Shown here piece after piece: positions 19,728 to 37,036 of a stretch of 64,000 nt of DNA. A model generated the notes under the pieces. The model was not told where the DNA came from. It was given only the letters and a program-made list of their open reading frames with translations, and did no database searches. Position 1 is the stretch's first letter, and each line of letters starts with the position of its first letter. The translations under genes were made by a program, and so were the position numbers. This stretch comes from Botryllus schlosseri. Lineage: Eukaryota. The stretch spans positions 6,758,001 to 6,822,000 of the forward strand of contig CM119382.1 of assembly GCA_051294905.1 (NCBI GenBank), read 5' to 3'.

Positions 19728-22700
19728 TTACGGCGCGTGCCGTTCAATATGGACATTATATTGGTTAGTAGAATACGATTCAAAACCGCAATAAGGACAC
19801 GTCAAGTTTGTAACATATCCTCTGAAACCGTGGCGAGAAGTGGTCGGAGTGTCGGCGGATTCCAGGTCTTCATCGGAGTCGGATAAAACCACTGCATCGC
19901 TCGACTCGGTGGGTGAACTTTTCAGCTCTGGTCGTATTGAAACAAATCTGAGCGCATTGTTGTTAATACGAGCTATATTGGGATGAACTTAGAAATCATC
20001 CAAATCTAGCATACTGTAACTTAGCATATACATTACAATATAGTAACAATCGCGTTCAAATAGACAATTACAAAAGTTGTTTGGCGCCACACGGTATTAT
20101 ACTGGCCTTAAAGCTCATTTATTTTCATGGCTAATTATATTAGCCATTATATTACCGTCGAAAAATACGGCGAGACTTTCAACAATTTGGGCAGCACACC
20201 AGTATCTCCCACAAAATGAGAAAACACCTATTGACAGAAAGGACTTGTCATTGAAAGATAAGTGCTAGTTGAGAATTGTAAAGTTTAGTCATATCCGATA
20301 TACGAAGACTTCGACCTTGCCAAAGACCTTACCTGTTTTTCGACATTTTAAATCCGCTTCTAGCTCGGGAACTGCCAACTTCAGGTTTTTCACAATCTGT
20401 TGGTACATACAGTACAGTTACAGCTTAAGTTCAAGAAATCGAAAGGCTGTTTCAAGACTACAAGATTGACAATTAGAAATAATGTGGTGCGTTTTCAAAA
20501 CTACTGTTTGATTGAAACCGAAAGTATTAGTTTCTTACTCAGTTGCAGTTTGATCGTACATAAATGAAGGTTGTACGGGATACATTTTCAAATCACTGCC
20601 ACTAATTAGAAGTTCGGGATGAACAATTGAGAAAGATCTGATGAGACCTTATGAAAATTCGCGAGATGACCGTCCAAAGACTCCAAATCGTCGCAGGTGT
20701 AATCGCAAAACTTGCACGATAATTGCGGCGTCGACAACTCCTTTTTGATGTGGAGCAAGATGTCGTCCGTGCTATCGTCCAACGACCTACAACACAAAGC
20801 AAGGTAACACGCCTCAAATCGAACATCAGGCTTCAGAGAGATAACTCAAGCAGAACAGACTTCAAATTAAAGTGAAGCCTACTGCATGCACCAGTAAAGA
20901 AATACCTGTAACATGTCAAATAATTATCATATTACTAATTGTGTCTATAGATAAAACCATGTTAGAGAATTAGAGATACCCGTTTATAGTTTTAGTCCTG
21001 ACAATGTATATTGCACTGGTACTTAACCTTTACTAACCTGGGGAACGCTTATATGCTAATTGGCAAATTTTCACCCAGCCATAAAAACAAAAATCCACCC
21101 TAATACACACAGTCTAATGCATTAGGCTACTATAGTTTACAGATGCACAAAATGATCTGTGCATCAACATAGTGTTAAAAGCCTTTTAAAATTTACTTTT
21201 TGTGCAGAACGAAAACATTAGAATGAACAATTTAACATTTATGGCAAATCAGTGTTGTTGGGAGAACAAAATAACCCACTTCGCCATGTACACGCACGAC
21301 TGCGCGTTCACTACGTAAGTCGATTGTATAAATATAAATATTATCATGAACGTTACACATGTCAACTCGATAACCGCGTATCGACAATATTGAAACATGG
21401 GTTCACTTTTCAGGGGGCTTCTTCCTATTTGTGTCAATGTCACAAATGCCGAATAGTTAATATCTCTGTTACTAACTGTAATGAAGGACTCATCCCACGA
21501 AAATAGGGATAGAAGTAGATCAAACTTACGGTGGAGAATATTTGGTTTCCGAGCAGCTGGAGCCGTGAAGAGATGGACGAGGACTTGCTTGATTAGGTAT
21601 CAAGCGGTTTCCACTGCGAATAGTTTTTCGAGCGCTCAGAGCGGGTCCTTTCACACGGACCCACTCAAAATCCCCGGTATCCTAAATAGAAGCGTCAAAA
21701 ACGTTCGCGCTACGAACAGACATCAATTCAATGCAAACTGTTCATAACGAGAAGAAATGGTCACTTACCGCAACATCAGATTCAAATTCGTGCGAGCCAG
21801 CGCTGCAAGATACACCGTATGGTTAGATCAGGCAAGAAAAACAACCCTTTAAATGAGGATTTTCGTATAATAAAGTATGGTTTTGAAGTTGAGTATTATA
21901 CACAACCGACGCAGCATAAGAATCGGGGTTGCAGATTGCAATGAATTGAGTCATGACCAGACTCGAGCCATATTATTGAAGACGGAAAACGACTCATTTT
22001 GAGTCACGTTGTGAATTGACTCGACTTGTCATTTCGCATGACTCATAACAAATCGGGCAGGATACTGTCTTTAATCTGTTTGAATAATCCCGTTAGGAGT
22101 GAAGGTCAAGGTTGTCATCGTTTGCACCCAAGTAGCGGTAACGGCTCCCATTAAGTAGAAAGAATTATTCTAGGCTTAGTGTGGCAAAATAAAACTGAAA
22201 CTCTGAAGGAAAAGTAGTCCAAAGTTTTTAAATGATTGAGGAAGTAGTGCAACTGGGCAAAATCTACCGAGTAGGCTACTTTGACAAAGTAGAAGTACTT
22301 ATTTACTGATGATCTCCGGATAAGGATAAGACAAATGACTATGTCATGCATGTGGGGGATTTGTTTCACGTCAGCAGAGTTACAAAACATGAGTTGAACA
22401 GGACTTACACTCGAGACTCAACAGTAATAAACACTAAACAGCATGAATTGGTCTCGGTCTCCATTCTCAACACTTGATGGCGAATTGAAAATGACTAGAC
22501 TTGACTCGATTTGAAACTATCAAAGTAAGATTGACTTGTGACTTGGTTACAACCATGATAAGAATTAGTCTTGACAGTTGAATCCAGGGTTGTATTGACT
22601 CGACTCCAGTCATGACTTTTTGGTGACTTTACTCGAGTCAATTTTTGTATTGGCTCATTGTGCAATGTGCATGACTCATACTAAGTCATATGACTCGAGA

Positions 22701-23458
22701 GTGGCACGGACAAGACAGACTTCGAAGAATAGTAAAGTATCCACATCATTGGTATTTCGTCTATCAGTCCTGATACTTGGAAAATAGGGCCAGAAACTGT
22801 TAGGACCAAGGAAAAGTACTATATTATGAATGCGAGCCATTCTATATCACTAGAGCAGAGTTGAGAAAGTGGATTGAGCCGGAATGAACAGAAAACTGAA
22901 CAGTGAACATAATGACTTGGACTAAGACTCCAGTAAAAACACTATGACTCGGACCCGACTCTCTACTAGCTGACTTGGACTTGACTCGAGTCAAAACTAT
23001 AAAAGTGATTCGATTGACTTGTGACTCGAAACCTTATGACTTGGTTACAACCCTGGTTGAATCAGACACCTTAGTTAGTTTGACCAGATCAGAAAGCCGT
23101 GGTCGTATCCACATTCCATGAAAACGCACAACAGAGAACTGATAAATGCCAGCAATATTCCGGCTAGAAGCAAAAATCGGTAGATAAATTCACACCTGTC
23201 CGCAAAGCTAGAGTGCACGTCCACGTGATCGACAATTTCTTCCTCTACCATCGTGAAGAAGTCACAATGCTTGCATAGCAGCATCTGAACGGGCAATATT
23301 GTTTGTATAATTCACAAAGTCGCAGGACCCAATACGTTCGGTTTGTGTCATACTCTACTTCCAGGATGTTTTTCAAGAGAATGTTGGTGCAAATCTTCAA
23401 GAGAATTGAAGGCGTCGACGCATTGACAGCAGCACCAGTGGTGTTTGTGGAATATGCT
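19728..23458 (-). CDS. Putative downstream exons of the zinc-finger gene
   Basis: Phase-compatible exons 23458-23354 (CCQCVDAFNSLEDLHQHSLEKH), 23284-23196 (CKHCDFFTMVEEEIVDHVDVH), 21802-21769, 21681-21530 and one starting at 20786 (CKFCDYTCDDLESLDGHLANFH). A terminal exon encodes CPYCGFESYSTNQYNVHIERH with TAA at 19730-19728. Some junctions (24.3-23.5 kb and 20.6-20.0 kb) are unresolved. Confidence 0.6.
21924..22557. mobile_element. GACTC-rich hAT MITE (intronic)
   Basis: TIR CGGGGTTGCA/TTACAACCATG; TSD ATAAGAAT on both sides. Confidence 0.8.
22585..23055. mobile_element. GACTC-rich hAT MITE (intronic)
   Basis: TIR CAGGGTTGTA/TACAACCCTG; TSD GTTGAATC (22577-22584, 23056-23063). Confidence 0.9.
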
Positions 23459-24719
23459 CTGAAGAAACGTAAAGAGTACATCCACACGCTACTTTGTTCA
23501 AAGTTTCAAATTCTCCGATACATAACCACAAATATTACAATATCCCGTCATATATTGCAAGATACGAACAACAAAATTGAGCACCCTTGCTGTTTGAGGC
23601 TATGTATACATTCTACAAGCAAGGGATTAAATTACCTCTAGCATTGTTTACATTTGGCCACACCATACAAATGGCAATTAAGCACAGTCGGTGACATTGT
23701 TAGCAAACACAAGATTTGAACTCTTTCTATTAATACCACCTGAAAAGGTGACAAGTCAGCATCGTAGAGTATTGCCACTGGGGAAACGTGGGAAATAATT
23801 TACAACTGGAACGGAGATAAGCTATCAAGCACCAGCAGTTTTATATGAATGTGCTCACACAGCTATCGGAGTATGACGAGGTAGATAAGCAAATGTGGAT
23901 CAAACTAAATCAATAAAAGTATTGGCTTGCTGCAATGGAAGCCGTTAAATAAGAAACCCAAAAGTTCGCACAAGCAGAGAAAACCTACTAGTACTTCTCA
24001 TGCTGCGTGAAAGCTGAAAATTAGTGCCTGCCCCAACATATTGGCGATCCAGGCCAGTGCAAATGATATCGACTATCAAAGGATAACATTTATCGGCCAG
24101 TCCAAGGATGTCATCACTCCTCTAACTGTTTCAAATGAGAGAGTCATCAGCAATGTCTGAGTGGTGGGCCTATTGGAGTACGGTAGTTCAGTTTTCGGCA
24201 GAGAAGCTGTTTCCGGAACTACAACATACGCCTGCTTGAATGGAAGCACTAGTTCCTTGCCCTGTCAAGTTTGACACTCATATACACATCAAACCGACAT
24301 ATTAAAAGTAGCTACTAGCCCAGCGGTTCTACATCTGGGGTCCATGGACCCCTAGGGGGTTCGCGGACTACTTACAAGGGCCATGAAAGGCTTATGTTGA
24401 AACTACATCTATGCAACTAAATTGTCCATACTTATAAGATCCGTCTAACCTACATCCTTATTTTGTCTTATTTTCGGCGCTAACCACACGTCATACAATA
24501 GTCGCACTACCGATACCAACACTAATAATTGCACTCCAATTGGTAACCAGGCAGTGACAGTGGGCTGGACAAAATTGACGGCATTTTTACAGTCATCACA
24601 AAAGACTTAGGGGTCCGCGGTAAGTACTCCTGTACTAATAGAAAAATGACACATTTATACCAGCATAATATATTGGCTCAAAATTCTGACTTCGATCAGT
24701 GTCCAGCTATCAAACATAC

Positions 24720-27700
24720 CTTGGGATTATTCCTATCCTTCAAGCCAGAAAAGCTTTCTCTAGCCGTACTCATGCCAGATGTCCCGCACAACTGCAGAAC
24801 GCGATTCGACACACGCCGCACTGCGCCCAAATCCTCGTGCCGTGCCTGACAGTGACTCAGGAAAGCGGCGGGGCATGAAAACCCAGCCTTGCACAGCGAA
24901 CACAGGTACGGGCGTTGCGCGCCACAATCCCGAATCACGCATGGCTCAGTTCCGCAACCGCACTCTCGCGACTGGACGAAAGAAATTTCGGGAGATGCTT
25001 CAGATTTTTCTAAATCTCTATAACACGATTTCGCAGTGAATTCGAGATCGTTGTCAGAAGAATCCGAGCTGTACGCGTTCGGAACTGCTTGTGTGCGACT
25101 CCTCAACGATGGGCTAGATATCAAATTCTGTCTATCTGACTCCATACCACGAGTACGCATGGTCACTCCAGACTCCGTATGAGCATGCACCTTCGCTCTA
25201 GACTCGATATATGCACGCTTCATCGCTCTAGACTGGACATGAGCACGCTTTGACGCTCCAAACTTGATATGAGAACCATTCTCAAACTGGCTGTTTTCAG
25301 TCGCGGACATAACATGCTTTACATTGAGATGATTCAATACCATTAACTTTGTCGAACTCATAAACCCACACCACAAGCAGACATAATTCCCGTCTTCGCC
25401 ACGACCGATATCCTCCAGCAAAAAATTGAGAACTGTCCCCACGTCCAACTCGACACCGTGGATGTGCTTGTGATGCCACACGCAGCGGGACCGGTCCGCA
25501 AAAGTAGCGTCACATCCAAAGCATCTGACGCCTAGCGAGACGCCGTGATCGCGGGCGATATGTCTTTCAAATTCTTCACGTTGGACCGAGCCTTCCAAGC
25601 AGAACTTGCAAATGACGAAGCACTTTCCGGGTTCCTCCTGTACTTCCGCCGGTTCGGTCTTTACACTTTCAACGCCATTGCTCGAGGACAGCACTTTTAA
25701 ATCCATATTTACCCGAAGAGAATCAGTTGCGCAGTCATCAGGAGATAACGTCAACACAGTAGAGTCATTTTCCAACTTCAGTTTGCGAACTTTGAGAAAA
25801 CAACCTTCACCAGGCTTGCTTGGTGTCACCGGCTCGCCCTTGCAAACGTTCACAGATTCGATATCCTCTCCGGTATTAAAATGATTGAAACCGGTAACAC
25901 GAGGTGCATTCCCCGCCTCGGAATCTACACCTGCACGTGAGCACCTGTTTTGGCTTGAAATATTCACTCCGTTACTCACATGCTTGTAGATCTTCTTATT
26001 CAAAGCGTTATCGTTCTTCAGATCGTAAAGAGCGACGACAGGACTTCGCTTTTTCGCGTCCTCGTTCGAAGACGAGTCTGCGGAAGCACCTCTTACATTT
26101 TTTATCGTTATTTTTTCCTCCGCGCTATCACAACGATAAGATTCTTCGGACGAGGCATAGTTTTGATTTTCAGAACTCTGTGAATCAGGAGAATAATTGA
26201 GCTCATCAGTGGAAGCGGGCAAATTTGGAATTACAAAATTTGTATCACCGACATCCCAAAATCCGTACCGCAACGTGTGCGGTTCCAAATCATACACATT
26301 GAAGGGAATAGTGTTACCACAATGATGCTGTACCACATGCCGCCAGATAGTGCTGTCGGGTGTACGCCTTTTGAAAACTTGCGAGCAATCCACGCAGGTG
26401 GAATATCGTACTCTCTTTTCGTTTGATTCCGGCTTCGCGCTCAAGCAACGATCACAATGACTTGTAATTTCACGCAGAGATACCATTTCCGAGCAGCAAA
26501 GCAAACACGAGTAGAGGTTATCGGCGGATGAGTAGGTAAAAGTAGTTGATTCAGCCGCATGCCGCTTTTGATAATGTGCGATCAAGTCCATGTCGTCAGA
26601 AGGGGTGTATTTGCAGATACAGCATCTCATATCCTCGTACTTTATTTGGGCAGCTTCGATTAAACTGGACCAATCTATTTTACCAATGTTATGCTTGTCG
26701 AGGTAGTGCCACTGCAACGCGTCTAGATTCCCGACAAAATCGCAATGATCACAAGTTTTCATCTCCTCCATACTGATAAGGACCATTTCGGATTGATAAC
26801 TGTGCTGACTGTGTACTTCTCTGTAGTGCATGGCCATTGCTACTCCAGTGAAAACAACTCGGTAACATATAGAGCATTGAAGAAAGGAAGAATAGGTAGA
26901 GTCCGACGGAGATGCACGACTCCTTTGGACGTTATGTAAAGAGAATTGCGTATGACTGTGTTCGACTTTATGATGTGCCAACATCTGCGCGAGCCAATCA
27001 CATTTAAATCCACAAATTCTACATCTGTATTGGTGGCACTGTAAAATCCCATGGTTGTCAATCAACCACCCCCCGTCTTCGGCCTCAATGTATTTGGCGG
27101 TGGACGGCGATACAAGAATAGTTTTGACGTGGATCTGAAACTTCCCCAACAAAAACAACGCAAACTTTTTAGGATAGCAGCCGTCGTGATATTGTTTATA
27201 ATGATTCAATAACGATAACAGATTCACCGAGGAGAAATCACACGCAACACATGGAATGTGATATGTACTAATGTGACATTCGGACGCGTTGCCGAAATAA
27301 TTCAACACGGATAGAAGCGATGCATCAACTTTGTCCAGGTAATCGTGCAACGAGTCGCGGTCGTCGGTTTTGGTACGTTTGCGTCTTTTGATACGGAGCA
27401 CGGAAGGTGAATCGGGCGTGTGCGAGGAATCATCTAAATCTGTGAGATGAGATTCAGTGTAATGCTCATGTAATCCTAGTTGAGTGGGGCACGTCCAATC
27501 GCACATCTGACACTTGAAGTTCTCGGCGACATCATCTATTCCCGTCCCATCTCGCGGATGCTGCGATTCGTAATGTTCCACCAAAGAACGGCTGTCCAAA
27601 AACAGCTTTTTACACACCACACACGACATTTTTTGCATCTGTAAAACAGCCGAGCTAGGATGATATACTGACAGCAGCCTGCGGGCCTTGACTTTACTTT

Positions 27701-28400
27701 TCGTCGGTTCTTCTTTAGCAAGACAGAGAGCTTCTAAATACTTCCTGTTAGCGCCGGTCGTGACAGACGAACCTTGTTTGCTCGGGTTTGCTTTACGTTT
27801 CGCGTGGAACTTTCTGCTGTGCAATATATAACGAGTCCTATTCAAAGTGATGTAGTTGCAGTATTGGCAGAAATACAGAAACGGCACTTTTCTGACTCGT
27901 CTACGCTTACACACCATCCTGTAGTGTTGAGGCAGCTCTCCATATACCGTGATGCCAGGATGCACGTACTCGAAATGACACGTTATGTTGGAATAACTCA
28001 TCGTCGCATAGTCACAATGTTTGCATAGGTATTTGATTTCAGACGGTTGAACCTGTGTTTGTTGACTGTTTGTTTGTCGACTGTAATCAATCAGTTTATG
28101 AGATTGCGGTTTAGAGTGAAAATATTCGCCGGCTTCCGAGTCCGAGTCGGAAGATAATGTGCGATCATGTTCCGAAATGGATGCCACTTCCACTCCATCA
28201 GAAATCACATCGAATTCCTGTGAATCTGACCTATCCACTTGATCTGACGACATGAGATCAGGTAGTTCACAAACAGGATAGCGATATTTTTCACTCAATG
28301 ACTGCTGTGCCCCACCATCATTTCCGCCATCCATGATTCGCACTCCGCTCAACGCATGTTGCCTATTCTCCCAAACCACCAAATCAAATTTGTCAGAAAG
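24720..28400 (-). CDS. Large exon of a multi-C2H2 zinc-finger protein (dispersed HX4H fingers, ZNF462-like HYxxxH pattern)
   Basis: 1227 open codons between acceptor TTTTTCCAG (28401) and donor AAG|GTATGT (24719). About 15 CxxC..H....H motifs, no TGEKP linkers. Confidence 0.85.
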
Positions 28401-28527
28401 CTGGAAAAACAGTTTTCAATTTGAAAATTATCATCCAGATACTCGAACATGTGCGGCCACGCATAACACAATTCACTACAATATGCAAGCAAAAAATGAC
28501 CAAAAGAGAACGTGTTGTACTCTCAAA

Positions 28528-28600
28528 TCACAAAAAGCATCTCGCCCCTGCACTACAGCACATTTACCGTTTCAGATACAGGTATTCATAAACTTTGTGA
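28528..28600 (-). promoter_or_regulatory. Form-2 SECIS element in the SPS2 3'UTR
   Basis: Minus strand: UCACAAAG (helix I), AUGAA core, helix II UACCUGUAUCUG, unpaired AAA, mini-stem CGGUA/UGCUG, return strand UAGUGCAGGGG, CGAG core, and UUUUGUGA closing helix I. Confidence 0.85.
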
Positions 28601-28904
28601 TCAAAAGCAACGACAAATGCTTTCAAATCAGCTACGGCAGGCTGCTCACACCCGCATAGTGATTCGTAAAGCAAGGAGTGCAAAGCAAACTTGAAGGTAA
28701 AATACTAGCAAGTATTTGTCAGCTCTACTTGAAATACCAAAAAACCAATAACCGTGCTTCCATATCACCGAAATAATAATCAATACGAAGGAACCCATTT
28801 ACGCATTAAAATCTCACAAAAAGTAACCTAAAATATGACATTTTCAACCAGGATTGTGAACCATTCGGAAAACACTGCGTCCGGACACCCTTTCTCTTCA
28901 TTTT

Positions 28905-30338
28905 TTACTGATTATTATAATGCAATTGTTGATACCCTTGATTTTGACCGTCATGCGGTTGCATAATACAATTATTCGGAACCAATCCGGCTGTTGTGTT
29001 CACCGGCATCATACCCTGTTGAGTAGTCGTCATAATGGGAATCGTGTTATTCTGATTCGGTAACGCCGACGCTTGAGGCTGCGTGCCGATGTTATCCATC
29101 ATTTCGTGAGTACGTTTTCTAGATGATTGCGGCAAGCTGTTCGGGTCAACGGGCTGTGGTATGTGCGGGTCTGGAGCCTGCGTTTTTGGTTGCAACGCGT
29201 TTTCCGGTTTCGTGTGAGAGACTTCTATAATTCTCGGCCTGCCGATAATTCGGGCAGACCTGTCTCCTTTTTCAACGACCCCGATAATCCACGCCTGGTG
29301 TCCTTCGGTGGCGATCATTTGCTGGCAGTACTTGGTAGCTTGCTCTCGGGAGAGTACGATTAGCAGACCGCCAGATGTCTCGGCGGAAGTTCCTTTCAGC
29401 AATCCGAAATTGACGATGCTAGCTCGGCTCACGGCCGCCATTTTCGATATCACCGGCAAATTGTGAATGGCGAAAGTCACTTCGTTACGTTGCTGTTTCG
29501 CTAAATTCTCAGCGTGTCCCAATATGCCGAAACCTGTTACATCGGTAGCCGCGTGGGCTTGAAATACGTGCATCAGTCTCGCCGCGTGACGGTTTAGTCT
29601 CGACATATGTAAGATAGCGTCGCTGTACGCTTTGATCGTATCTTCCGCCGAAATAACGTGCTTAATTCTATTCCAATGTTGATTCTTTTGATTCATCCAT
29701 TGAAACGCGTTGACAGCCGGTTGTGTTCCTAAAGGTTTAGTCAGCACAAGTACATCGCCGACGACGGCTTGATCTGGCATGATGAACTCGTTTTGTTGAC
29801 AAACAGATGTCGCCACACCTCCAATTAGACACCAAGGGTTAATAACCGTTTGACCCCCGGTTACATTCGTACCAGCTTCTACAGCGAGGTCTCGGAATCC
29901 TTGGATCATCATAGGCACTACAACGTCGCGTTCTTCTTCCGTAAACTTTGAACTCAATCCAAGTAGCATCAACATGTTATCGCATTCCGTAACGCCCATA
30001 GCGTAAAGATCGCTAAGCACGTTGGCGCAAGCGATTTTACCCATAGCGTACGGGTCGTTGACAAGTGGGTAAAAAAAGTCAGTAGTTTGAAGTAAAGAAA
30101 GACCCCCAAATCGTAGAGGTATTACACATGAATCTAGACCTATGCCAATGGTAGGTAGCGTCTGCGGAAAGCCTTCACGTTGTGAAGGCTGTCCGTCGTT
30201 GGTAAGACCCTCAAGAAGTTTGAGCAGAACTTTTTGAGGGACTTTACAACCTCATCCTTTCAGTCCGGTATAGTCGGTCAGGCGGAACTTCTTTTCTAGC
30301 CCGTGTTCTTCGGGATCCCAGAGTTTTTCAGAAGCCAT
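28905..30338 (-). CDS. SEPHS2: Selenophosphate synthetase 2 (selenoprotein), intronless, 477 aa, Sec at residue 29
   Basis: [31 protein letters not shown](30254-30252)[16 protein letters not shown]...[32 protein letters not shown] runs in frame into the ORF-track ORF ([17 protein letters not shown]...[13 protein letters not shown]...AETSGGLLI). A SECIS lies downstream. Confidence 0.95.
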
Positions 30339-30659
30339 CGCGACCAATTTCGACGGAGTGTAGCTTACAGACGATATATAAAAATTAAACAACCAAATAT
30401 CTGTTGACAAGTAAGATAATATACAAGCGCGATATTCAATTGTTAGTGTGGGATTGGATGGCTTTAGGAAGTGTGCTTAACCCTCGCTACGCGGTAGACT
30501 CATGCATGAGCCCGGATTGTATTTTCACGAACACGCTTCACTTAATCCCCAATATCTTGCGTTGTACTGGTCGTAGAAAGTTACATCTATTTCAGATGGA
30601 TAGCTAGTATCAATACGCATACGTCGAGCCATAAATAACCTATCAGACTATGAAATAAC

Positions 30660-30842
30660 CTCATCAAAATGCCGATTGAATACACAAAAACGTTTTGCGC
30701 AAAATACAACTTGCGGCGGCGCTCGCGTGAATGTGCGCGCGCGAGATAAACCAGCGCCCGTGACCAGCACATCTCCGTTACAGACGTCAAATTCATATGC
30801 AGCTCTTTTCTCCAAACAGCGGTGGACTGTGTCATCGCCCAT
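30660..30842 (-). other. Possible upstream exon or uORF (MGDDTVHR...FNRHFDE|GT) 5' of SPS2
   Basis: GC-richer open stretch ending in phase 0 at GAG|GTTATT, frame-compatible with the zinc-finger acceptor at 28401. The donor is weak and I recognise no homology. Confidence 0.3.
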
Positions 30843-30949
30843 CTATTGGAATGCTTATATCTAACATTGGGCGCAGGACAGATTATTTCTAATTGAAAGT
30901 AAACATATTTTACGAAATATTATGCGTGGGTTTTAGTAATACATTCCAC

Positions 30950-32075
30950 GTTGTGATTAGCGCGGATTTGCTGTTGCAGATTACGCATATGGATTATTCG
31001 TGCTTTTCATACCAATACACCAACACTACCATCTTCAGTGAGATACATGATCTCCGCTATTGATATGACAGCAAATTTACGACATTTTCTGGTGAAAATG
31101 TTGCGCATCTTTGCCGTGGTAGCGTACGAAACGCACCGCTCCATAATATGTGACAAACTGATTTGAAACGCCCATAAAATATCAGTGAAGCACTGTAATC
31201 ATATTGCACGTATGACTCTGTCAATTCAACCAATTCAGTCCTAGTTGTTTTACATCGGCAAAGTTCGTTTCAACACATAGTACTATCTCGTACAAAGGAT
31301 GGATTAGCGATTACATATACCGGCGCGTTGTGAAATGATTCATTTCGGGGATACTATGTTATTACCAAAACAATAACATGCCGCAATATCTTTGCTGTTG
31401 TAATTAGCGCAGATTTCAAGTTTCAGATTACGCAAAACAAGATATATCTTTGCAATAAGTTGAGTCGCCAATATATACTATATAATACATCATCTACATT
31501 GTTTCATACGAAGCCATCATTGTACCCATGACATGGTTTTCCATTTGTTGGTGCTAGATTTGGTTTGTTACCATTTCAATTTGCTGTTGTATTCCACGCG
31601 TGATGCATTATTTCATATGTTGTATCATGCAATATACTATATTCTTTTGCCATAATATGGCTGAATGTCGACTGTCAAGTTAGCGTATAGATGTATTGTA
31701 TAGATATGTAGAGTCTGCTGTCGCGAAAGCACTTCGAAACTGATTGCTGCGATGCGCGTATGGTACAGAAACCACTATATCTTCTGCGATAGCTGACGTG
31801 GTTGTGGATGCCAATTATCTGTTCAATAGATAGGCCTTGTCTCAAAGCGTTTGTCTACACCACCACCGTCGATGGCTTGCATATTATTTGATAAACTGAT
31901 TTGAAATGCCAACTAAAATATCAGTGAGACAGTGTATTCATATTGCATGTATGACTACTTGTCAATTCATCCAATTCAGTTATAGTTGTTTTACAACGGC
32001 AAAGTTCGTTTCAACACATAACACTATCTCGTACAGAGAATAAGCGATTACCATAGAACGGCGTTGTGAAATGAA
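30950..32075. repeat. Local imperfect direct duplications
   Basis: About 31155-31345 is repeated at about 31890-32075; about 30950-31060 is repeated at about 31400-31510. Confidence 0.7.
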
Positions 32076-32404
32076 TAATTTCAACGTCCGCCATACTACG
32101 TCATATTCGATCAATAACACGCGACGCGTGTATGTGCGCGGAATGCGAGACGCCTGGCGTCGAACACACTGTAGCCAACTGTAGCCATCGGTATATCAGC
32201 ACTCGTTACAATCGACTATATTATCGTAAGAACCTCACTCAGGTCGTTTTGGAATCCTGATATTGCTGTGAAATCAGTCAGGCGATGATTCTATCCCGAG
32301 CAGCTCCGTGTATGACGTAGTCACAAATTCAAAAATCAAATTCTCTTTTATTTTCAAAAAGTTGAGAACACTTCAATATATAGGGGCATCACCTCTGATT
32401 CTCT

Positions 32405-32495
32405 CGCTCTCAGAGTAGCTCAGTTGGTTGGGCGCCTGTTTCCTGATTACAGCGATATATTGGGTGTCGGTTCAAGTCCCGTGGTTCGGATTTTA
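32405..32495 (+). pseudogene. tRNA-like remnant or SINE head
   Basis: A-box TAGCTCAGTTGG and B-box GGTTCAAGTCC, but no acceptor stem or valid anticodon arm. Confidence 0.5.
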
Positions 32496-33212
32496 TGAAT
32501 CTTTTTCTAAATGCATTAAAATTCGGTCCTGAGGCCGACCGCGGAAGGAGGGTTAAAACTGAACACTGAGGGAATTCAGCTCTCAACCCTATTCAAGAAC
32601 ATATTATACAGCCTATATATCAGCCCAAGAGTTTGATGTAAAAGCGGAGGAACAGCCTCATGTTACCTGACGGAACATGAATTGTCAGCATCAGCAAACA
32701 TGATACCATAGCCCAGTATATTTGGAAATTTCAAGAACGCAGCGGCCATTTGCGTGCATGGAATCTTGTCTTATGCTCCCCTAACATCTTGCGAAATGCC
32801 TTGCTGACTGCTCCTGGTCACCCAAAATCTGATTCTCTGTGAGGCTAAAAACAGCCTAATTAAGCGTGTTGATTAATGAAAGTAATCGGAGCAAGAAGTG
32901 TATAATAGAACGAGTGTAGAATAAGGCTGACTATTTAGCTGATAAAGTCCAAGTTTGGGAAATGCTATCTATATACTGTGAAAATAGTGGTAGCCTAATT
33001 TAGTGGTTCCTAAAGACTAGAGAAATTATAAAACGGTTGCGGCACACTTGCAAACGAAAAGTTGATTGAAAAAAAATAATTTCGACATGCTAACGCAACG
33101 GATGTGCTTGTTTACATGTACATATATATACCGTACTTCTGAAACGAGGTTGCATGGTTGACAAATATACTTGCATTTCGTCGTCAATTCCAAGCTATTA
33201 AAGCGTTTAGAG

Positions 33213-33602
33213 CAGGGGTGTCAAACATCCGGCTCGCCAGGGGATTTCATCTGGCCCGCTAAGCAATTCAGAGTAGGTTGAAAAATACTTGAGATTTTTG
33301 TTGGGAAATACTTCTATTAATTGATCGCTCAAGAAAGCAAATGTCGAGCATGTTCAATTGTTCATATGCCAAATTATAACCATCTGACTGCGGTGTGGCG
33401 GTTTCACTCTAGTTACCTTGAGGAAGTCGTTGACATTGACATCTTAATTTTGAGAAAACCGAAAAATGCCCACTGGGTTCGAGGCTTTATGGAAAATCAA
33501 CCATTTGGAACCAACATTTTGGAATCAGTTAACTGGTCTGACCCGCGAGCGATTTGAAGGTTTGAATCCGGCGCGTGACGCAATTTGAGTTCGACACTCC
33601 AG
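33213..33602. mobile_element. Charlie-like MITE
   Basis: TIR CAGGGGTGTC/GACACTCCAG; TSD GTTTAGAG/GTTTGGAG. Confidence 0.75.
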
Positions 33603-33645
33603 GTTTGGAGCTATTAATTTCAGTCAATACCGAAAAGTCTTGTTC

Positions 33646-33780
33646 CTATATCAACAGAGATGGAAATCGTAATATAATTTTGATTGCTTTTGAACTGATC
33701 ATAGAATAGATTTCAGAGCGGACAGTGAAAAACACATCCATCCGTATTCTGTGGAAAGAACATTTTTTAAAACAGGTCGT
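33646..33780 (-). pseudogene. Charlie/hAT transposase C-terminal remnant
   Basis: MDVFFTVRSEIYSMISSKAIKIILRFPS resembles the Charlie FW...EYP.L...A.K.LLPF.S motif. Confidence 0.45.
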
Positions 33781-34859
33781 TTCGCGAATCAATGAGCTAT
33801 GATTTTTCTTCTGCAGAAAGATTGCCGAGTTCGTTGTTTCCAAATTTTAAATTAAACTATAAAACCAAATAAAGTTCTCAACAGCAGTGAAAGTTATAAT
33901 CAAAGCAAACACAATCTTTGAGACCTTGATTTTCCACAGCATCAACTTTTCGTCTAATTATTAGGATAGTATTGAATTGATGGTGTCATGCATAGATATC
34001 AGCTACATTGTAACAGTTAGAGTAGTCTAGTGCTACATCACAGGTTGCACGGGTCTATGCTTGGCTTCATGCCATAATTTAAAGGAGCACTATATGTTTT
34101 GTACATGTGCTCTCAAGTTCAAGTTGAGGGTGTAGCAGGAGCAGCAGCAGTCATTTAACTCAGCAAGTCATCATATTCTAACTGCAGACTGCATCTCACG
34201 ATTTTCACAAAACGTACCCCTAATACAGTGACAATCCACTCATCCCTGTGGAGTCTGTGGTAAGAGTCAAACGTCATCGTTTCTTGGCGATTTGCAACAT
34301 TTCTGGCACACATTTTTTCTCAATTTTTAAAGTAGCCACCTTCAATTAACTCTTAAAATAAATGTATGGACATGCTTCAGCCTCGACAAAGTATTTTGAA
34401 CACTTCTGGTTATTCTTCAATATAACAAAGAGACAATTACTAAGCAGCACTGATCAGGTTGCATGCTAATTCAATGCAAATCAACTCTCCATGAAAAGCA
34501 TATGCCCTTGGCTTGGCCATTATTTCGGTACGATATAGGCTGCACCGGCTGCGGATTCTCAGATTTCACAATCCTATCCCTATCGAACCTACCGCAAATG
34601 ACATTTGGACTACGTAAAGCATGTTGTAAATATCAGGTCACGAACTTGAAGTGGAAGCATATTATCCTGCTTCTTGCATAAAACATCCTGCAAAGTTTCA
34701 ACGTCTCAACCCCTATTCCGGTTCGGCGTCTGCTAGTGCTGAAGACAAGAAATACTGACTCAATGACTCATGTTACGCCGCTTCAGCCCGGTCCGGATTC
34801 GGGACCCGGCAGCCGGCACTCAATCGGATCTGGATCGTTATTATTCGAGCTCGCCGGAG

Positions 34860-35000
34860 CAAACATAGAAGAGATGAGGAAGCTAGAAATTGCCAAGTTT
34901 ATGTATCAGTTCCATTGCGGTCACTGTCCCTCAAATTTCAACGACTAATGTACCTCAGAGTCAATAGCGTCCGGCACAGAACGGCACACCCGCGTCAACG
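34860..35000 (+). mobile_element. Older LINE ORF2 fragment, inverted relative to the adjacent LINE
   Basis: NIEEMRKLEIAKFMYQFHCGHCP versus NIEDMRKLEIAKFMYQFHCGRCP, with many nucleotide substitutions. Confidence 0.75.
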
Positions 35001-35010
35001 AAGAATAACT

Positions 35011-35820
35011 ATCATCATCATCATCATTGGTTTATTAGCAATTTTATCAGTTCAATACACCACAAAAAATGCGATACAATGAATAGACAGGAAGATGTCG
35101 AAGCGACTTGGATTTGTCAATGGAATCGGACACCCACCTTGGCCTAGGCGTAGTAAAGAGGAGGCATGCACACTGAATGAAAGTAAAGAATACAGTATAG
35201 AAAAAGAAAGCGACAAGAAATAGGGCGGCATGTCATGGGAAGCGAGATCGATAGGTCAGTCGTGGTCCGGTAATCTTGAGGATGGACTGTATTTATTTAG
35301 TAGTAATTGCTTGTATCTCGACTTGAATGTGGACATGCTCGTCGACTGTCGGATGGCCGGCGGGATACTGTTCCACACATCAGGTCCGGCATATTTGATG
35401 GAGCGATGATCTTTTCGGTCGATCATATGATATTTGGACGACGTGGACGCGCGTGTGTTGTACTTGTGCGCTTTTGATTCAGAGTTAAAGAAGTCATTGA
35501 AATATTCGGGGCAACGACCGCAGTGAAACTGATACATAAACTTGGCGATTTCTAGTTTCCGCATATCTTCTATGTTTAGGACGCCGAATCTCTTCAGCAG
35601 CGACTTATTGGATGGGCAGCCAGGCCCCTTTGGGGCCCTAGCTATGATTCGGAGCACTTTATGCTGTAGTTTCTGCAGTGGCTTGAGTGCAGTTTTACTG
35701 GCAGCCCCCCAACAGAGGATGCCATAATGTAACTTCGATTGGATTAAGGATTTAAAGAGTATCAGGAGAACCCATGCTGGCATGAAGCGCCCAAGGCTGT
35801 AGAACAGGCCGCACTTCGGT
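35011..35820 (-). mobile_element. 5'-truncated CR1/L2-group LINE (ORF2 C-terminus, 3'UTR, (ATG)n tail)
   Basis: FKSLIQSKLHYGILCWG...LQKLQHKVLRII...KYNTR...SIKYAGPDVWNSIP..IRQSTSMSTFK is the typical post-RT C-terminus; trinucleotide tail at 35011. Confidence 0.9.
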
Positions 35821-37036
35821 GATAATTTAGTTTCTACTACCATTTTATATGTTCAGGACGGAATACAAGAAAACACATTGCTTTATCACAGGGGTGAGCA
35901 AACTACGGGCCGCGGGCCGCATGCGGCCCTCGAAAGGCTCGAGAATAGCATTCAAAATATTGAAAAATGCGCAGTAAAAATCTAATTTCTACTGGGTCTC
36001 GATCAAAAAGGTGGTCAGTAACGAAGTACGTCTACTTTTTGGAAGTAATCAAGTAGTTTTCCTCTGCTTCTGGTACTTACTCAAGTAGATCTGATTTTTT
36101 CTACTTCTACCTCATAATACTTTGCGATCTACTTACTTACTTTTCGCTATTTTCAGTTTGTCAAGTAGAAGTAGTTTAATCCCCCAATACGAAAGATAGC
36201 CTGAGGAATTTTGGGGCTGTTTTCACGGAGCACCAGCATTTAATATTCATAAAAGTCAAGTAAAGCCCAGAAAGTTTGCTGCGCTTCACGCCCAGTATAG
36301 TTACGGAGCGACAAATATGTCTTCACGAAAGTATCAGTGAATATAATTTAGGTACCGGTTCCGCTCACACCGCATTTTCACCCATATCAAATATTTCATC
36401 ACAGTAATTGTGGTTCACCATAACGTTTGAAACTATACCGTTTCGCAATCTAGCAATTACCTATCATATCGTAATCTAGCAACCCATTACGTGTCTTGCT
36501 AATCTGGAAAATCCAGCTCTTTTCAACGTTACACCTGTTTTAGCAGATCACATTTGAAGCTTTATGGACAAAAGACATGAAATGTATTTTCCGCTTTTTA
36601 GAAGTGGTATTTGTATTTCTGCTTCAATTGCGAGTATCATACTTTGAGTTCTAATTAATTTCAGTTCTTTTGTCTGCAGAACAGGCATGTTGGAGCATAA
36701 AAGCAAGCTAGTGTAGTAATGCCTCTATTTTCCGAAAATAAAGCTACACTAATTATAACTTTTACGATCCACAATATTTGTTATTAACGTATACTAATCG
36801 CGCAAACAGATTAAACCGTATCCGATACAATTTCTACGCATTGCTCTTCGTCTAAACCTGGGACCTTATCATATGGCGTAGGCCGCCATGTCATGATATT
36901 CTCTTAAACGGGGTCTTCTAGTAAACAAAGGGTTATAGTATCGCATTTTCATATTAATACTATCATTTGCATCCCATGATGAGAAAGAATGCTTCTTCCG
37001 TCGAAAATAGATACCTCCTGGGATGCATCAATACGA

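What the first reader, a model, noticed from the sequence alone, without database searches (positions are those of the whole stretch)
28401..30660. SPS2 retrogene sits in an intron of, or in an operon with, a giant zinc-finger gene
Seen: SPS2 is intronless and on the same strand as the zinc-finger gene. Its SECIS ends only about 127 nt before the strong zinc-finger acceptor (TTTTTCCAG at 28401), and I see no AATAAA in that gap. SPS2 has its own acceptor-like AG at 30365-30364, 25 nt before the ATG. A candidate exon at 30842-30660 would splice in frame to the zinc-finger exon. Established: ascidians use SL trans-splicing and have operons with little or no intercistronic DNA, and SPS2 arose by retrotransposition in stolidobranch ascidians. 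Inference: either one promoter feeds two proteins via alternative acceptors, or this is an SPS2-ZnF bicistron whose resolution also forms the 3' end of a selenoprotein mRNA.
Basis: partly seen in the sequence, partly recalled or inferred. Interest (0 to 1): 0.72.

Follow-up and report, generated by a model that had tools for sequence, protein, structure and literature searches.

The report
SPS2 retrogene heads an ascidian operon
The intronless selenocysteine gene SPS2 gets a spliced leader at its front, and its poly(A) tail is added exactly at the splice acceptor of the next gene, a ZNF462-like zinc-finger gene. This is the hallmark of a Ciona-type operon, here headed by a dated retrogene that still carries a fossil of the spliced leader.

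Summary
All genes are on the minus strand.

- **SPS2:** it is intronless (ATG 30338, Sec-UGA 30254-30252, stop 28905). It has a conserved type-II SECIS at 28602-28526.
- **5' end of SPS2:** RNA reads show the published 25-nt chordate spliced leader joined at acceptor 30402/30401.
- **3' end of SPS2:** poly(A) is added directly after the AG at 28402/28401, which is the ZnF 3' splice site.
- **Poly(A) signal:** there is no AATAAA or ATTAAA on this strand anywhere between 32346 and 26647.
- **Precedent:** Ciona operons without intercistronic DNA show exactly this picture.
- **Relatives:** two related species have the same SPS2-then-ZnF order. One contig there is cDNA-like and dicistronic.
it has no RNA support. 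Transcription there starts on the opposite strand.
- **Not shown:** the leader on the ZnF exon, and a shared promoter.
- **Extra:** the SPS2 5' UTR begins with a 15/16 fossil of the leader. This marks the retrogene as a copy of a trans-spliced mRNA.

This is a new member of a known kind, with moderate interest. The same stretch is listed once more in the scan's index (s1-229064); no other DNA with this arrangement was found there.

The parts
30401..30402 (-). AG of the SPS2 trans-splice acceptor (caacAG); the exon starts at 30400
   Evidence: 18 X24 reads carry a loose leader behind 30402. Its reverse complement is the template-switch oligo end plus GATTGGAGTATTTGGTTGTATTA, with the final AG shared with the genome. 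X1 and X2 contigs also end at 30402. The leader equals the published 25-nt 'Chordata 1' SL.
30385..30399 (-). Fossil of the spliced leader (TATTTGGTTGT-TTAA, 15/16 to SL positions 9-24) at the very start of the SPS2 5' UTR
   Evidence: local alignment score 25. Among 3118 windows of 82 nt in the 64-kb window, only this site and an SL-RNA-like copy at 3179-3199 reach it. Weaker remnants sit in the same aligned columns in L009 and L010.
28905..30338 (-). SPS2 (selenophosphate synthetase 2) coding sequence, intronless, 477 codons plus stop, with a Q/P-rich C-terminal tail
   Evidence: AIRS 49 bits, AIRS_C 64 bits; 100% continuous match here, against a multi-exon paralog on contig C6; it groups with other intronless SPS2 at 100/100 support.
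30252..30254 (-). In-frame TGA read as selenocysteine (codon 29, GLKG-U-GCKVP)
   Evidence: The same TGA is in L009, L010 and L018. The paralog on C6 has Gly there.
28526..28602 (-). Type-II SECIS element (AUGA 28589-28586, apical AAA, GA on the 3' side)
   Evidence: fold; the consensus structure is kept in L009 and L010, with 28 pairs, 3 of them with compensatory changes. Rfam found nothing.
28401..28402 (-). AG that is both the last templated dinucleotide of SPS2 mRNA (poly(A) follows) and the 3' splice site of the ZnF first exon
   Evidence: in X22 (single-cell 3' library) 15 reads have poly-T loose ends before 28401. Depth is 252x in 28401-28600 against 0.25x in 28201-28400. The genomic bases that follow are CTTTCTG, so this is not internal priming. 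The X2 ZnF contig ends at 28402 plus one letter.
24720..28400 (-). First (giant) exon of a ZNF462-like C2H2 zinc-finger gene; start ATG 28334-28332, donor AAG|GTATGT after 24720
   Evidence: The start Met (MDG/MDD) is conserved in P0001 and P0003. A two-codon uORF lies at 28357-28349.
20615..23461 (-). Further ZnF exons (about 23461-23195 and about 20785-20615) separated by introns
   Evidence: tblastn of P0001 residues 1165-1230 and 1309-1350; acceptor and donor contexts.
30660..30842 (-).
   Evidence: no joint from 30660 to 28400 in four runs. Template-switch-tagged 5' ends of a plus-strand RNA map to 30696 and 30710. Stranded X22 reads in 30801-31800 are mostly plus-strand RNA.
30696..31600 (+). 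Divergent plus-strand transcript that starts about 300 nt upstream of the SPS2 acceptor. It suggests a bidirectional promoter in about 30403-30710.
   Evidence: loose ends with the template-switch oligo at 30696 and 30710 (4 reads each), and an X22 3' pile of 15.5x in 31401-31600. The promoter itself is inferred.

Best explanation
SPS2 and the ZNF462-like gene form a Ciona-type operon resolved by the spliced leader (SL), with no intercistronic DNA.

Proposed mechanism:
1. A promoter just upstream of 30402 makes a precursor RNA that runs through both genes. The promoter is probably bidirectional and lies in about 30403-30710.
2. The 25-nt SL is trans-spliced to the acceptor at 30402/30401 and gives SPS2 mRNA its capped 5' end.
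3. The same precursor is cut at the ZnF acceptor AG (28402/28401). The upstream product ends in that AG and is polyadenylated without any AAUAAA signal. It carries the Sec-UGA and the SECIS, which lies 125 nt before the tail.
4. The downstream product, starting at 28400, is expected to receive the SL and to encode the zinc-finger protein from ATG 28334.

Shown here: the SL on SPS2, the poly(A) at the acceptor AG, the absence of a poly(A) signal, the conserved gene order, and a dicistronic cDNA-like contig in a relative.

Inferred: the SL on the ZnF exon, the single promoter, and whether trans-splicing itself or a separate cleavage makes the SPS2 3' end.

SPS2 is the known stolidobranch retrogene. 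A fossil SL at the start of its 5' UTR shows it was copied from a trans-spliced mRNA. The AG now used as acceptor sits where the internal AG of the fossil leader would be.
For: -: 18 reads plus contigs from two other studies join the SL at 30402/30401.
- 15 poly(A) reads start right after 28401, and 3'-end depth falls from 252x to 0.25x across that base.
- the ZnF contig breaks at 28402 plus one letter, in the same way as the SPS2 contig breaks at its SL junction.
- no joints into 28400 or 30400 were seen.
- the leader equals the published 25-nt chordate SL.
- 393 perfect copies of the leader in the genome, none for the reversed control.
- no AATAAA or ATTAAA on this strand from 32346 to 26647.
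- (PMC1488885): in 19 of 19 mapped Ciona operons the upstream poly(A) site abuts the downstream acceptor AG, and 16 of 18 lack AAUAAA.
- SPS2 directly upstream of the ZnF ortholog in L009 and L010. L009 runs from the SPS2 5' UTR to the ZnF 3' UTR and lacks three introns that L010 has at the same places, so it is a cDNA-like dicistronic contig.
- L009 also has no AATAAA or ATTAAA between the SPS2 stop and the ZnF ATG.
- the fossil SL.
- two loci in this genome carry an SL followed by a second copy that starts at TATTTGG. So the SL's internal AG has served as an acceptor elsewhere.
Against: - No read or contig shown carries the SL on the ZnF exon. ZnF depth was only about 1-2x in raw reads and 5-12 in contigs.
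- No RNA spanning 28401 was seen in this organism. The spanning contig comes from a relative and is a de Bruijn assembly that can join molecules.
- SPS2 is about 10-20 times more abundant than ZnF in contig depth. This fits an operon only if the two mRNAs differ in stability or if processing is mutually exclusive.
- A ZnF promoter inside the SPS2 3' UTR is not excluded.
- In a second clade of intronless SPS2 (L018) the neighbours differ, and no ZnF lies within 3.4 kb. The linkage is therefore not universal.
- The Styela clava ZnF homolog has no SPS2 within 10 kb upstream.
Confidence: 0.75

Rival explanations
1. Two adjacent but independently transcribed genes. The ZnF has its own promoter inside the SPS2 3' UTR, with a short outron that is trans-spliced at 28401. 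SPS2 transcripts end at the same AG because read-through RNA is cut there, or by coincidence. This would be a 'hybrid' arrangement.
For: The two mRNAs differ 10-20 fold in depth. No spanning RNA was seen in this organism. Nothing tested excludes an internal promoter.
Against: A match at single-base precision between a poly(A) site without a signal and a splice acceptor is not expected by chance, and it is the rule in Ciona operons. No template-switch-tagged 5' end reading into the ZnF was seen in 28905-28401. The two tagged ends at 28561 and 28589 belong to short cDNAs that end in the SPS2 tail, at the SECIS stem. A dicistronic cDNA-like contig exists in a relative. Even under this reading SPS2 3'-end formation depends on the ZnF acceptor.
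Confidence: 0.13
2. SPS2 is nested in the first intron of the ZnF gene. A non-coding ZnF leader exon upstream of 30402 is cis-spliced to 28400, and SPS2 is a separate gene inside that intron.
For: Same strand, a strong acceptor at 28401, and the frame stays open across the acceptor. A leader exon beyond 33400 was not covered by the reads laid.
Against: No joint into 28400 in four runs, and the ZnF contig carries only one extra letter beyond 28402. The SPS2 acceptor takes the SL, which by the rule cited in PMC1488885 implies no upstream donor on the same precursor. The ZnF start Met is conserved in this exon. A poly(A) tail placed exactly at an intron's last base has no explanation under nesting. 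L009 is colinear from SPS2 into the ZnF.
Confidence: 0.07
3. One promoter feeds two proteins through alternative acceptors, and a coding exon at 30842-30660 splices in frame to the ZnF exon.
For: The frame arithmetic and a GT after 30660 are correct.
Against: No joint from 30660 to 28400. RNA over 30660-30842 comes from the plus strand, with capped starts at 30696 and 30710. The ORF has no homolog support, and the ZnF orthologs start at the Met inside the big exon.
Confidence: 0.03

Closest known systems
Ciona intestinalis SL-resolved operons without intercistronic DNA (Satou et al. 2006, PMC1488885; Satou et al. 2008, PMC2760879)
   Same: Same-strand neighbours. The upstream mRNA's poly(A) is added right after the AG of the downstream acceptor. 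There is no AAUAAA. One SL serves both monocistronic and operon genes. The 5'-most gene has a single exon, as in 60% of Ciona operons.
   Different: The species is a different ascidian with a 25-nt SL rather than Ciona's 16-nt one. The SL on the downstream gene and the dicistronic precursor are not yet shown here. The upstream gene is a dated retrogene encoding a selenoprotein, so the processing site also defines the SECIS-bearing 3' UTR.
Intronless SPS2-Sec retrogene of Styelidae and Pyuridae (Mariotti et al. 2015, PMC4561486)
   Same: Intronless, with a Sec-UGA at the active site and a SECIS in the 3' UTR. A separate multi-exon SPS1-Gly paralog exists elsewhere in the genome. It is monophyletic with other intronless SPS2.
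   Different: In the passages I searched, that paper did not mention the genomic context, the trans-splicing, the fossil SL or the operon partner.
Retrogenes tagged by a relict spliced leader in dinoflagellates (e.g. PMC6050394, PMC5585692; seen as abstracts)
   Same: A DNA-encoded remnant of the SL lies at the 5' end of the gene. A new SL is added just upstream of it, at an AG that corresponds to one inside the old leader. Tandem SL-plus-relict copies exist elsewhere in this genome.
   Different: This is a chordate. There is one relict, 15/16 preserved. My literature searches found no report of this for ascidians, but the searches were limited.
Hydra RFC140-flp operon (PMC3273482)
   Same: An intronless newcomer gene is expressed by sharing a resident gene's transcription unit through SL trans-splicing.
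   Different: There the newcomer is the downstream gene, and an intergenic spacer with a poly(A) signal exists. Here the newcomer is upstream and there is no spacer.

Membership tests
Ciona-type SL-resolved operon without intercistronic DNA | Two or more genes on the same strand, directly adjacent | tested here: met
   the SPS2 mRNA ends at 28401 and the ZnF exon starts at 28400, both on the minus strand.
Ciona-type SL-resolved operon without intercistronic DNA | The poly(A) of the upstream mRNA is added immediately after the AG of the downstream trans-splice acceptor | tested here: met
   15 poly(A)-containing reads start at 28401. 3'-end depth falls from 252x to 0.25x across it.
Ciona-type SL-resolved operon without intercistronic DNA | The downstream cistron carries the SL at that acceptor | tested here: inconclusive
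   the ZnF contig of X2 stops at 28402 plus one letter, as the SPS2 contig does at its proven SL junction. No SL-bearing read was listed, and ZnF depth is very low.
Ciona-type SL-resolved operon without intercistronic DNA | No canonical AAUAAA within 40 nt of the upstream poly(A) site (typical but not absolute) | tested here: met
   none on the minus strand between 26647 and 32346. The same holds in L009.
Ciona-type SL-resolved operon without intercistronic DNA | An unresolved dicistronic precursor RNA exists | tested here: inconclusive
   L009 from a related species is a spliced, cDNA-like contig that covers both genes. No spanning RNA was seen in this organism.
Ciona-type SL-resolved operon without intercistronic DNA | A single promoter upstream of the first gene and none between the genes | not testable with these tools
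   The only related evidence is a divergent plus-strand start at 30696/30710, which hints at a promoter upstream of SPS2.
Stolidobranch SPS2-Sec retrogene | Intronless ORF with an in-frame UGA at the catalytic position | tested here: met
Stolidobranch SPS2-Sec retrogene | [quoted passage not shown] | tested here: met
   Rfam gave no hit.
Stolidobranch SPS2-Sec retrogene | A separate multi-exon SPS1 paralog with Gly in place of Sec | tested here: met
   at least 6 exons on contig C6, with the motif LHGGGCKVP.
Stolidobranch SPS2-Sec retrogene | Groups with other intronless SPS2, apart from SPS1-Gly | tested here: met
   100/100 support for the intronless clade. Long branches are a caveat.
Retrogene tagged by a relict SL | DNA-encoded SL remnant at the 5' end of the gene, beyond what chance gives | tested here: met
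   a 15/16 match. No unrelated window among 3118 reaches its score.
Retrogene tagged by a relict SL | Poly(A) remnant or target-site duplication that delimits the insertion | not tested
   Neither was searched for. The retrogene is old, and only the SECIS region of the 3' UTR aligns with relatives.
Gene nested in a host-gene intron | A host exon upstream is spliced across the nested gene | tested here: not met
   no joint into 28400 within 27401-33400 in four runs. Power is low for the ZnF.

The most novel reading that the evidence does not exclude
The retrocopy of an SL-bearing SPS-Sec mRNA became a working gene because it lay in, or came to lie in, the outron of a trans-spliced ZNF462-like gene. 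The host promoter drives it. The AG inside its fossil leader became its own trans-splice acceptor. The host's acceptor became its 3'-end site, so no poly(A) signal was needed. If this route is general, it would explain an observation that Satou et al. 2008 left unexplained: most 5'-most genes of ascidian operons have a single exon. SL fossils could then be used to find retrogenes across ascidian genomes, as is done in dinoflagellates.
Probability: 0.3. Interest if true: 0.75.

Novelty: new member of a known kind. Interest (0 to 1): 0.5.

Why it matters
Operons of this kind are common in ascidians, so the arrangement itself is ordinary. Three points add value.

1. A selenoprotein mRNA has its 3' end set by a neighbour's splice acceptor rather than by a poly(A) signal. 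The SECIS-bearing 3' UTR is therefore tied to the expression of another gene.
2. The upstream gene is a retrogene with a known parent and a known age. This gives a concrete, datable case of a single-exon 5'-most operon gene, a class whose prevalence in Ciona was called unexplained.
3. The fossil leader, and two tandem leader-plus-fossil loci elsewhere in this genome, suggest that ascidian retrogenes can be recognised by leader remnants.

Tried and rejected
- **Rfam:** a permissive scan of 24000-34000 found no SECIS, so the element rests on folding and conservation.
- **ZnF N-terminus:** a protein search with the first 200 residues found nothing, so transcript fragments carrying the ZnF 5' end could not be fetched.
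- **P0002 contig:** no DNA could be obtained. It has a cut 70-residue gene about 550 nt upstream of its ZnF; I could not check what that gene is.
- **Styela clava:** the SPS hit P0010 is the Gly form and is not on record for context. The S. clava ZnF homolog (31% identity, possibly not the ortholog) has no SPS2 within 10 kb upstream.
- **L018 (second clade of intronless SPS2):** it shares no flanking genes with the window. I therefore do not claim that the operon dates from the retroposition itself.
- **Conservation:** no nucleotide conservation with L010 was found upstream of SPS2 or at the junction. Only the SECIS and a short element before it align.
- **L012:** this ZnF-like cDNA from another sample shows no recognisable leader at its 5' end.
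- **Loose ends at 30479 in X1 and X2:** they continue into different sequences and have no splice signals. I read them as a repeat boundary, not an exon.
- **Loose end at 27407:** this is only reads running over the end of the stretch.
- **Not used:** structure and complex prediction, because they do not bear on the question.
- **Organism:** it is coded in the tools and I did not try to name it.
Full report
**What is in the sequence**

All features lie on the minus strand.

- An uninterrupted frame runs from ATG 30338 to TAA 28905. It has one in-frame TGA at 30254-30252, inside GLKG-U-GCKVP, the catalytic motif of selenophosphate synthetase 2.
- The part after the TGA hits AIRS and AIRS_C well above threshold.
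- A hairpin with AUGA (28589-28586), an apical AAA and a 3' GA spans 28602-28526. The same structure and core are kept in two relatives, with three compensatory pairs. Rfam did not report it.
- 125 nt further on comes tttttccAG, whose G is at 28401. It is followed by an open frame of 1234 codons that ends at a donor after 24720.
- This protein is ZNF462-like: PF23225 at 27.3 bits, just at the cut-off. It has homologs of 38-40% identity in assembled public runs. Further exons lie near 23461-23195 and 20785-20615.
- The window's own genome also holds a multi-exon paralog on another contig, with Gly in place of Sec.
- In a tree, the intronless forms group together at 100/100 support, apart from the Gly forms.
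- All this matches the SPS2-Sec retrogene described for Styelidae and Pyuridae (PMC4561486).

**What the reads show**

I laid one bulk RNA run (raw reads, template-switch library), one single-cell 3' run (raw reads) and contigs of two older runs from different studies on 27401-33400.

*1. The SPS2 5' end.*
- 18 bulk reads stop matching at 30402 and continue with a leader. Read on the minus strand, this is the end of the template-switch oligo followed by GATTGGAGTATTTGGTTGTATTA. The final AG is shared with the genome.
- Contigs of both older runs end at the same base.
- The full 25-nt sequence is listed as the chordate spliced leader in PMC3795323.
- It occurs 393 times in this genome, against none for the reversed control.
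- SPS2 is therefore SL trans-spliced at caacAG (30402/30401) and its exon starts at 30400.

*2. The SPS2 3' end.*
- In the 3' library, depth is 252x in 28401-28600 and 0.25x in 28201-28400.
- 15 reads carry a poly-T loose end immediately before 28401, which is poly(A) on the RNA strand.
- The next genomic bases are CTTTCTG, so this is not internal priming.
- The tail therefore starts right after the AG of the ZnF acceptor.

*3. The ZnF 5' end.*
- The ZnF exon is covered at low depth (5-12 in contigs, against 75-180 for SPS2).
- Its contig in X2 ends at 28402 plus one letter. This is the same kind of break as at the proven SPS2 leader junction.

*4. Joints and the candidate exon.*
- No joint links any upstream position to 28400 or 30400.
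Its template-switch-tagged 5' ends map to 30696 and 30710, and its 3' pile lies near 31400-31600.

**Poly(A) signal**

There is no AATAAA or ATTAAA on the minus strand anywhere between 26647 and 32346.

**Comparison with what is published**

- Satou et al. 2006 mapped 19 Ciona operons precisely. In every one, the upstream poly(A) site directly abutted the downstream trans-splice acceptor, written as ...AG followed by the tail. 16 of 18 lacked AAUAAA (PMC1488885).
- The junction at 28402/28401 has exactly these properties.
- The same paper states that trans-splicing uses acceptors without an upstream donor. This argues against a ZnF leader exon upstream of SPS2, because the SPS2 acceptor takes the leader.

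**Relatives**

- Two contigs from other species carry an SPS2 ortholog (82% and 78% identity) directly upstream of the ZnF ortholog on the same strand.
- L010 has introns in the ZnF at three places where L009 is continuous.
- L009 begins 47 nt before the SPS2 ATG and ends about 250 nt after the ZnF stop.
- L009 is therefore best read as an assembled RNA that spans both cistrons, with the ZnF introns removed. It also has no poly(A) signal between the genes.
- Because it is a de Bruijn contig, it shows that spanning RNA exists in that sample, not that one molecule has all these features.
- The ZnF proteins of both relatives begin with MDG or MDD, as does the window's ORF at ATG 28334. No upstream coding exon is needed.
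- The linkage is not universal. A second clade of intronless SPS2 (L018, 66% identity) has different neighbours and no ZnF within 3.4 kb.
- The Styela clava ZnF homolog has no SPS2 within 10 kb upstream.
- I therefore cannot say whether the retrocopy landed next to the ZnF gene or was joined to it later.

**The fossil leader**

- Right after the acceptor, the 5' UTR reads TATTTGGTTGT-TTAA. This is 15 of 16 identical to positions 9-24 of the leader.
- Among 3118 windows of the same size in the 64-kb window, only this site and an SL-RNA-like copy at 3179-3199 reach that alignment score.
- Weaker remnants sit in the same aligned columns in the two relatives.
- The leader has an internal AG just before TATTTGG, and the acceptor now used lies one base before that motif.
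- Two loci elsewhere in the genome carry a leader followed directly by a second copy that starts at TATTTGG. This is the signature of re-splicing at that internal AG followed by retroposition, as known from dinoflagellates (abstracts).
- SPS2 was therefore very probably copied from a trans-spliced mRNA, and its acceptor may derive from the fossil. The second point is inference.

**Most likely mechanism**

- A promoter just upstream of 30402 makes a precursor that covers both genes. The divergent plus-strand starts at 30696 and 30710 suggest a bidirectional promoter.
- The leader is added at 30402/30401.
- The precursor is cut at the ZnF acceptor. The upstream piece, ending in AG, is polyadenylated and serves as SPS2 mRNA. 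Its SECIS lies 125 nt from the tail.
- The downstream piece is expected to receive the leader.
- The cut could be made by the trans-splicing reaction itself, leaving a branched upstream product that must be debranched. It could instead be a separate cleavage that excludes trans-splicing of the same molecule. This is unresolved in Ciona and here.
- The 10-20 fold excess of SPS2 fits either mutually exclusive processing or unequal mRNA stability.

**Novelty**

- The retrogene (PMC4561486) and the operon type (PMC1488885, PMC2760879) are both known.
- What is new is that this retrogene is the single-exon 5'-most gene of such an operon, that a selenoprotein mRNA takes its 3' end from a neighbour's acceptor, and that it keeps a fossil leader.
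- Satou et al. 2008 found single-exon genes in the first position of 60% of Ciona operons and called the significance unclear. This locus is a dated example that suggests one route.
- My literature searches found no report of leader fossils or of retrogene-headed operons in ascidians, but they were limited to open-access text.

No N stretches were filled. Read laying was given 6000 letters.

Noticed in passing
own genome; L001-L008, L020, L021: The 24-nt core of the spliced leader occurs 393 times, dispersed over the genome. In 8 loci inspected, the sequences that follow differ: 5 continue with GT, two (L002 and L008) are copies of one repeat with a 263-codon ORF, and L007 has a 330-codon ORF 92 nt downstream. 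Two further loci carry a leader followed by a second copy that starts at TATTTGG. This suggests many retrocopies of trans-spliced RNAs, mixed with leader-RNA genes.
   Followed up: partly
window 3150-3199 (-): A leader-like sequence (2 mismatches in the first bases) is followed by GTAAG and a perfect 8-bp hairpin (GCTATGGA...TCCATAGC). It looks like a leader-RNA gene or a variant of one.
   Followed up: no
window 28639-28652 (-): A short element, GTGTGAGCAGCCT, about 40 nt upstream of the SECIS is identical in the two relatives, while the rest of the 3' UTR does not align. It may be an extension of the SECIS or a separate regulatory site.
   Followed up: no
window 30696-31600 (+): A plus-strand transcript without an obvious ORF has capped 5' ends at 30696 and 30710 and a 3' pile near 31400-31600. 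It diverges from SPS2. The surrounding region 30479-32500 matches many variant contigs and looks repeat-rich.
   Followed up: partly
window 28561 and 28589 (-): In the single-cell 3' library, 12 and 8 reads have the template-switch oligo joined at these two bases, inside the SECIS hairpin. They are probably reverse-transcriptase stops at the structure rather than RNA starts.
   Followed up: no
window 28349-28357 (-): A two-codon upstream ORF (ATG CGT TGA) lies in the ZnF 5' UTR, out of frame with the main ATG at 28334.
   Followed up: no
window 35256-35843 (-): A 195-codon ORF, with a similar fragment on the plus strand at 34736-34948 sharing the motif EDMRKLEIAKFMYQFHCG. I took it for the C-terminal end of a retrotransposon protein but did not test this.
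   Followed up: no
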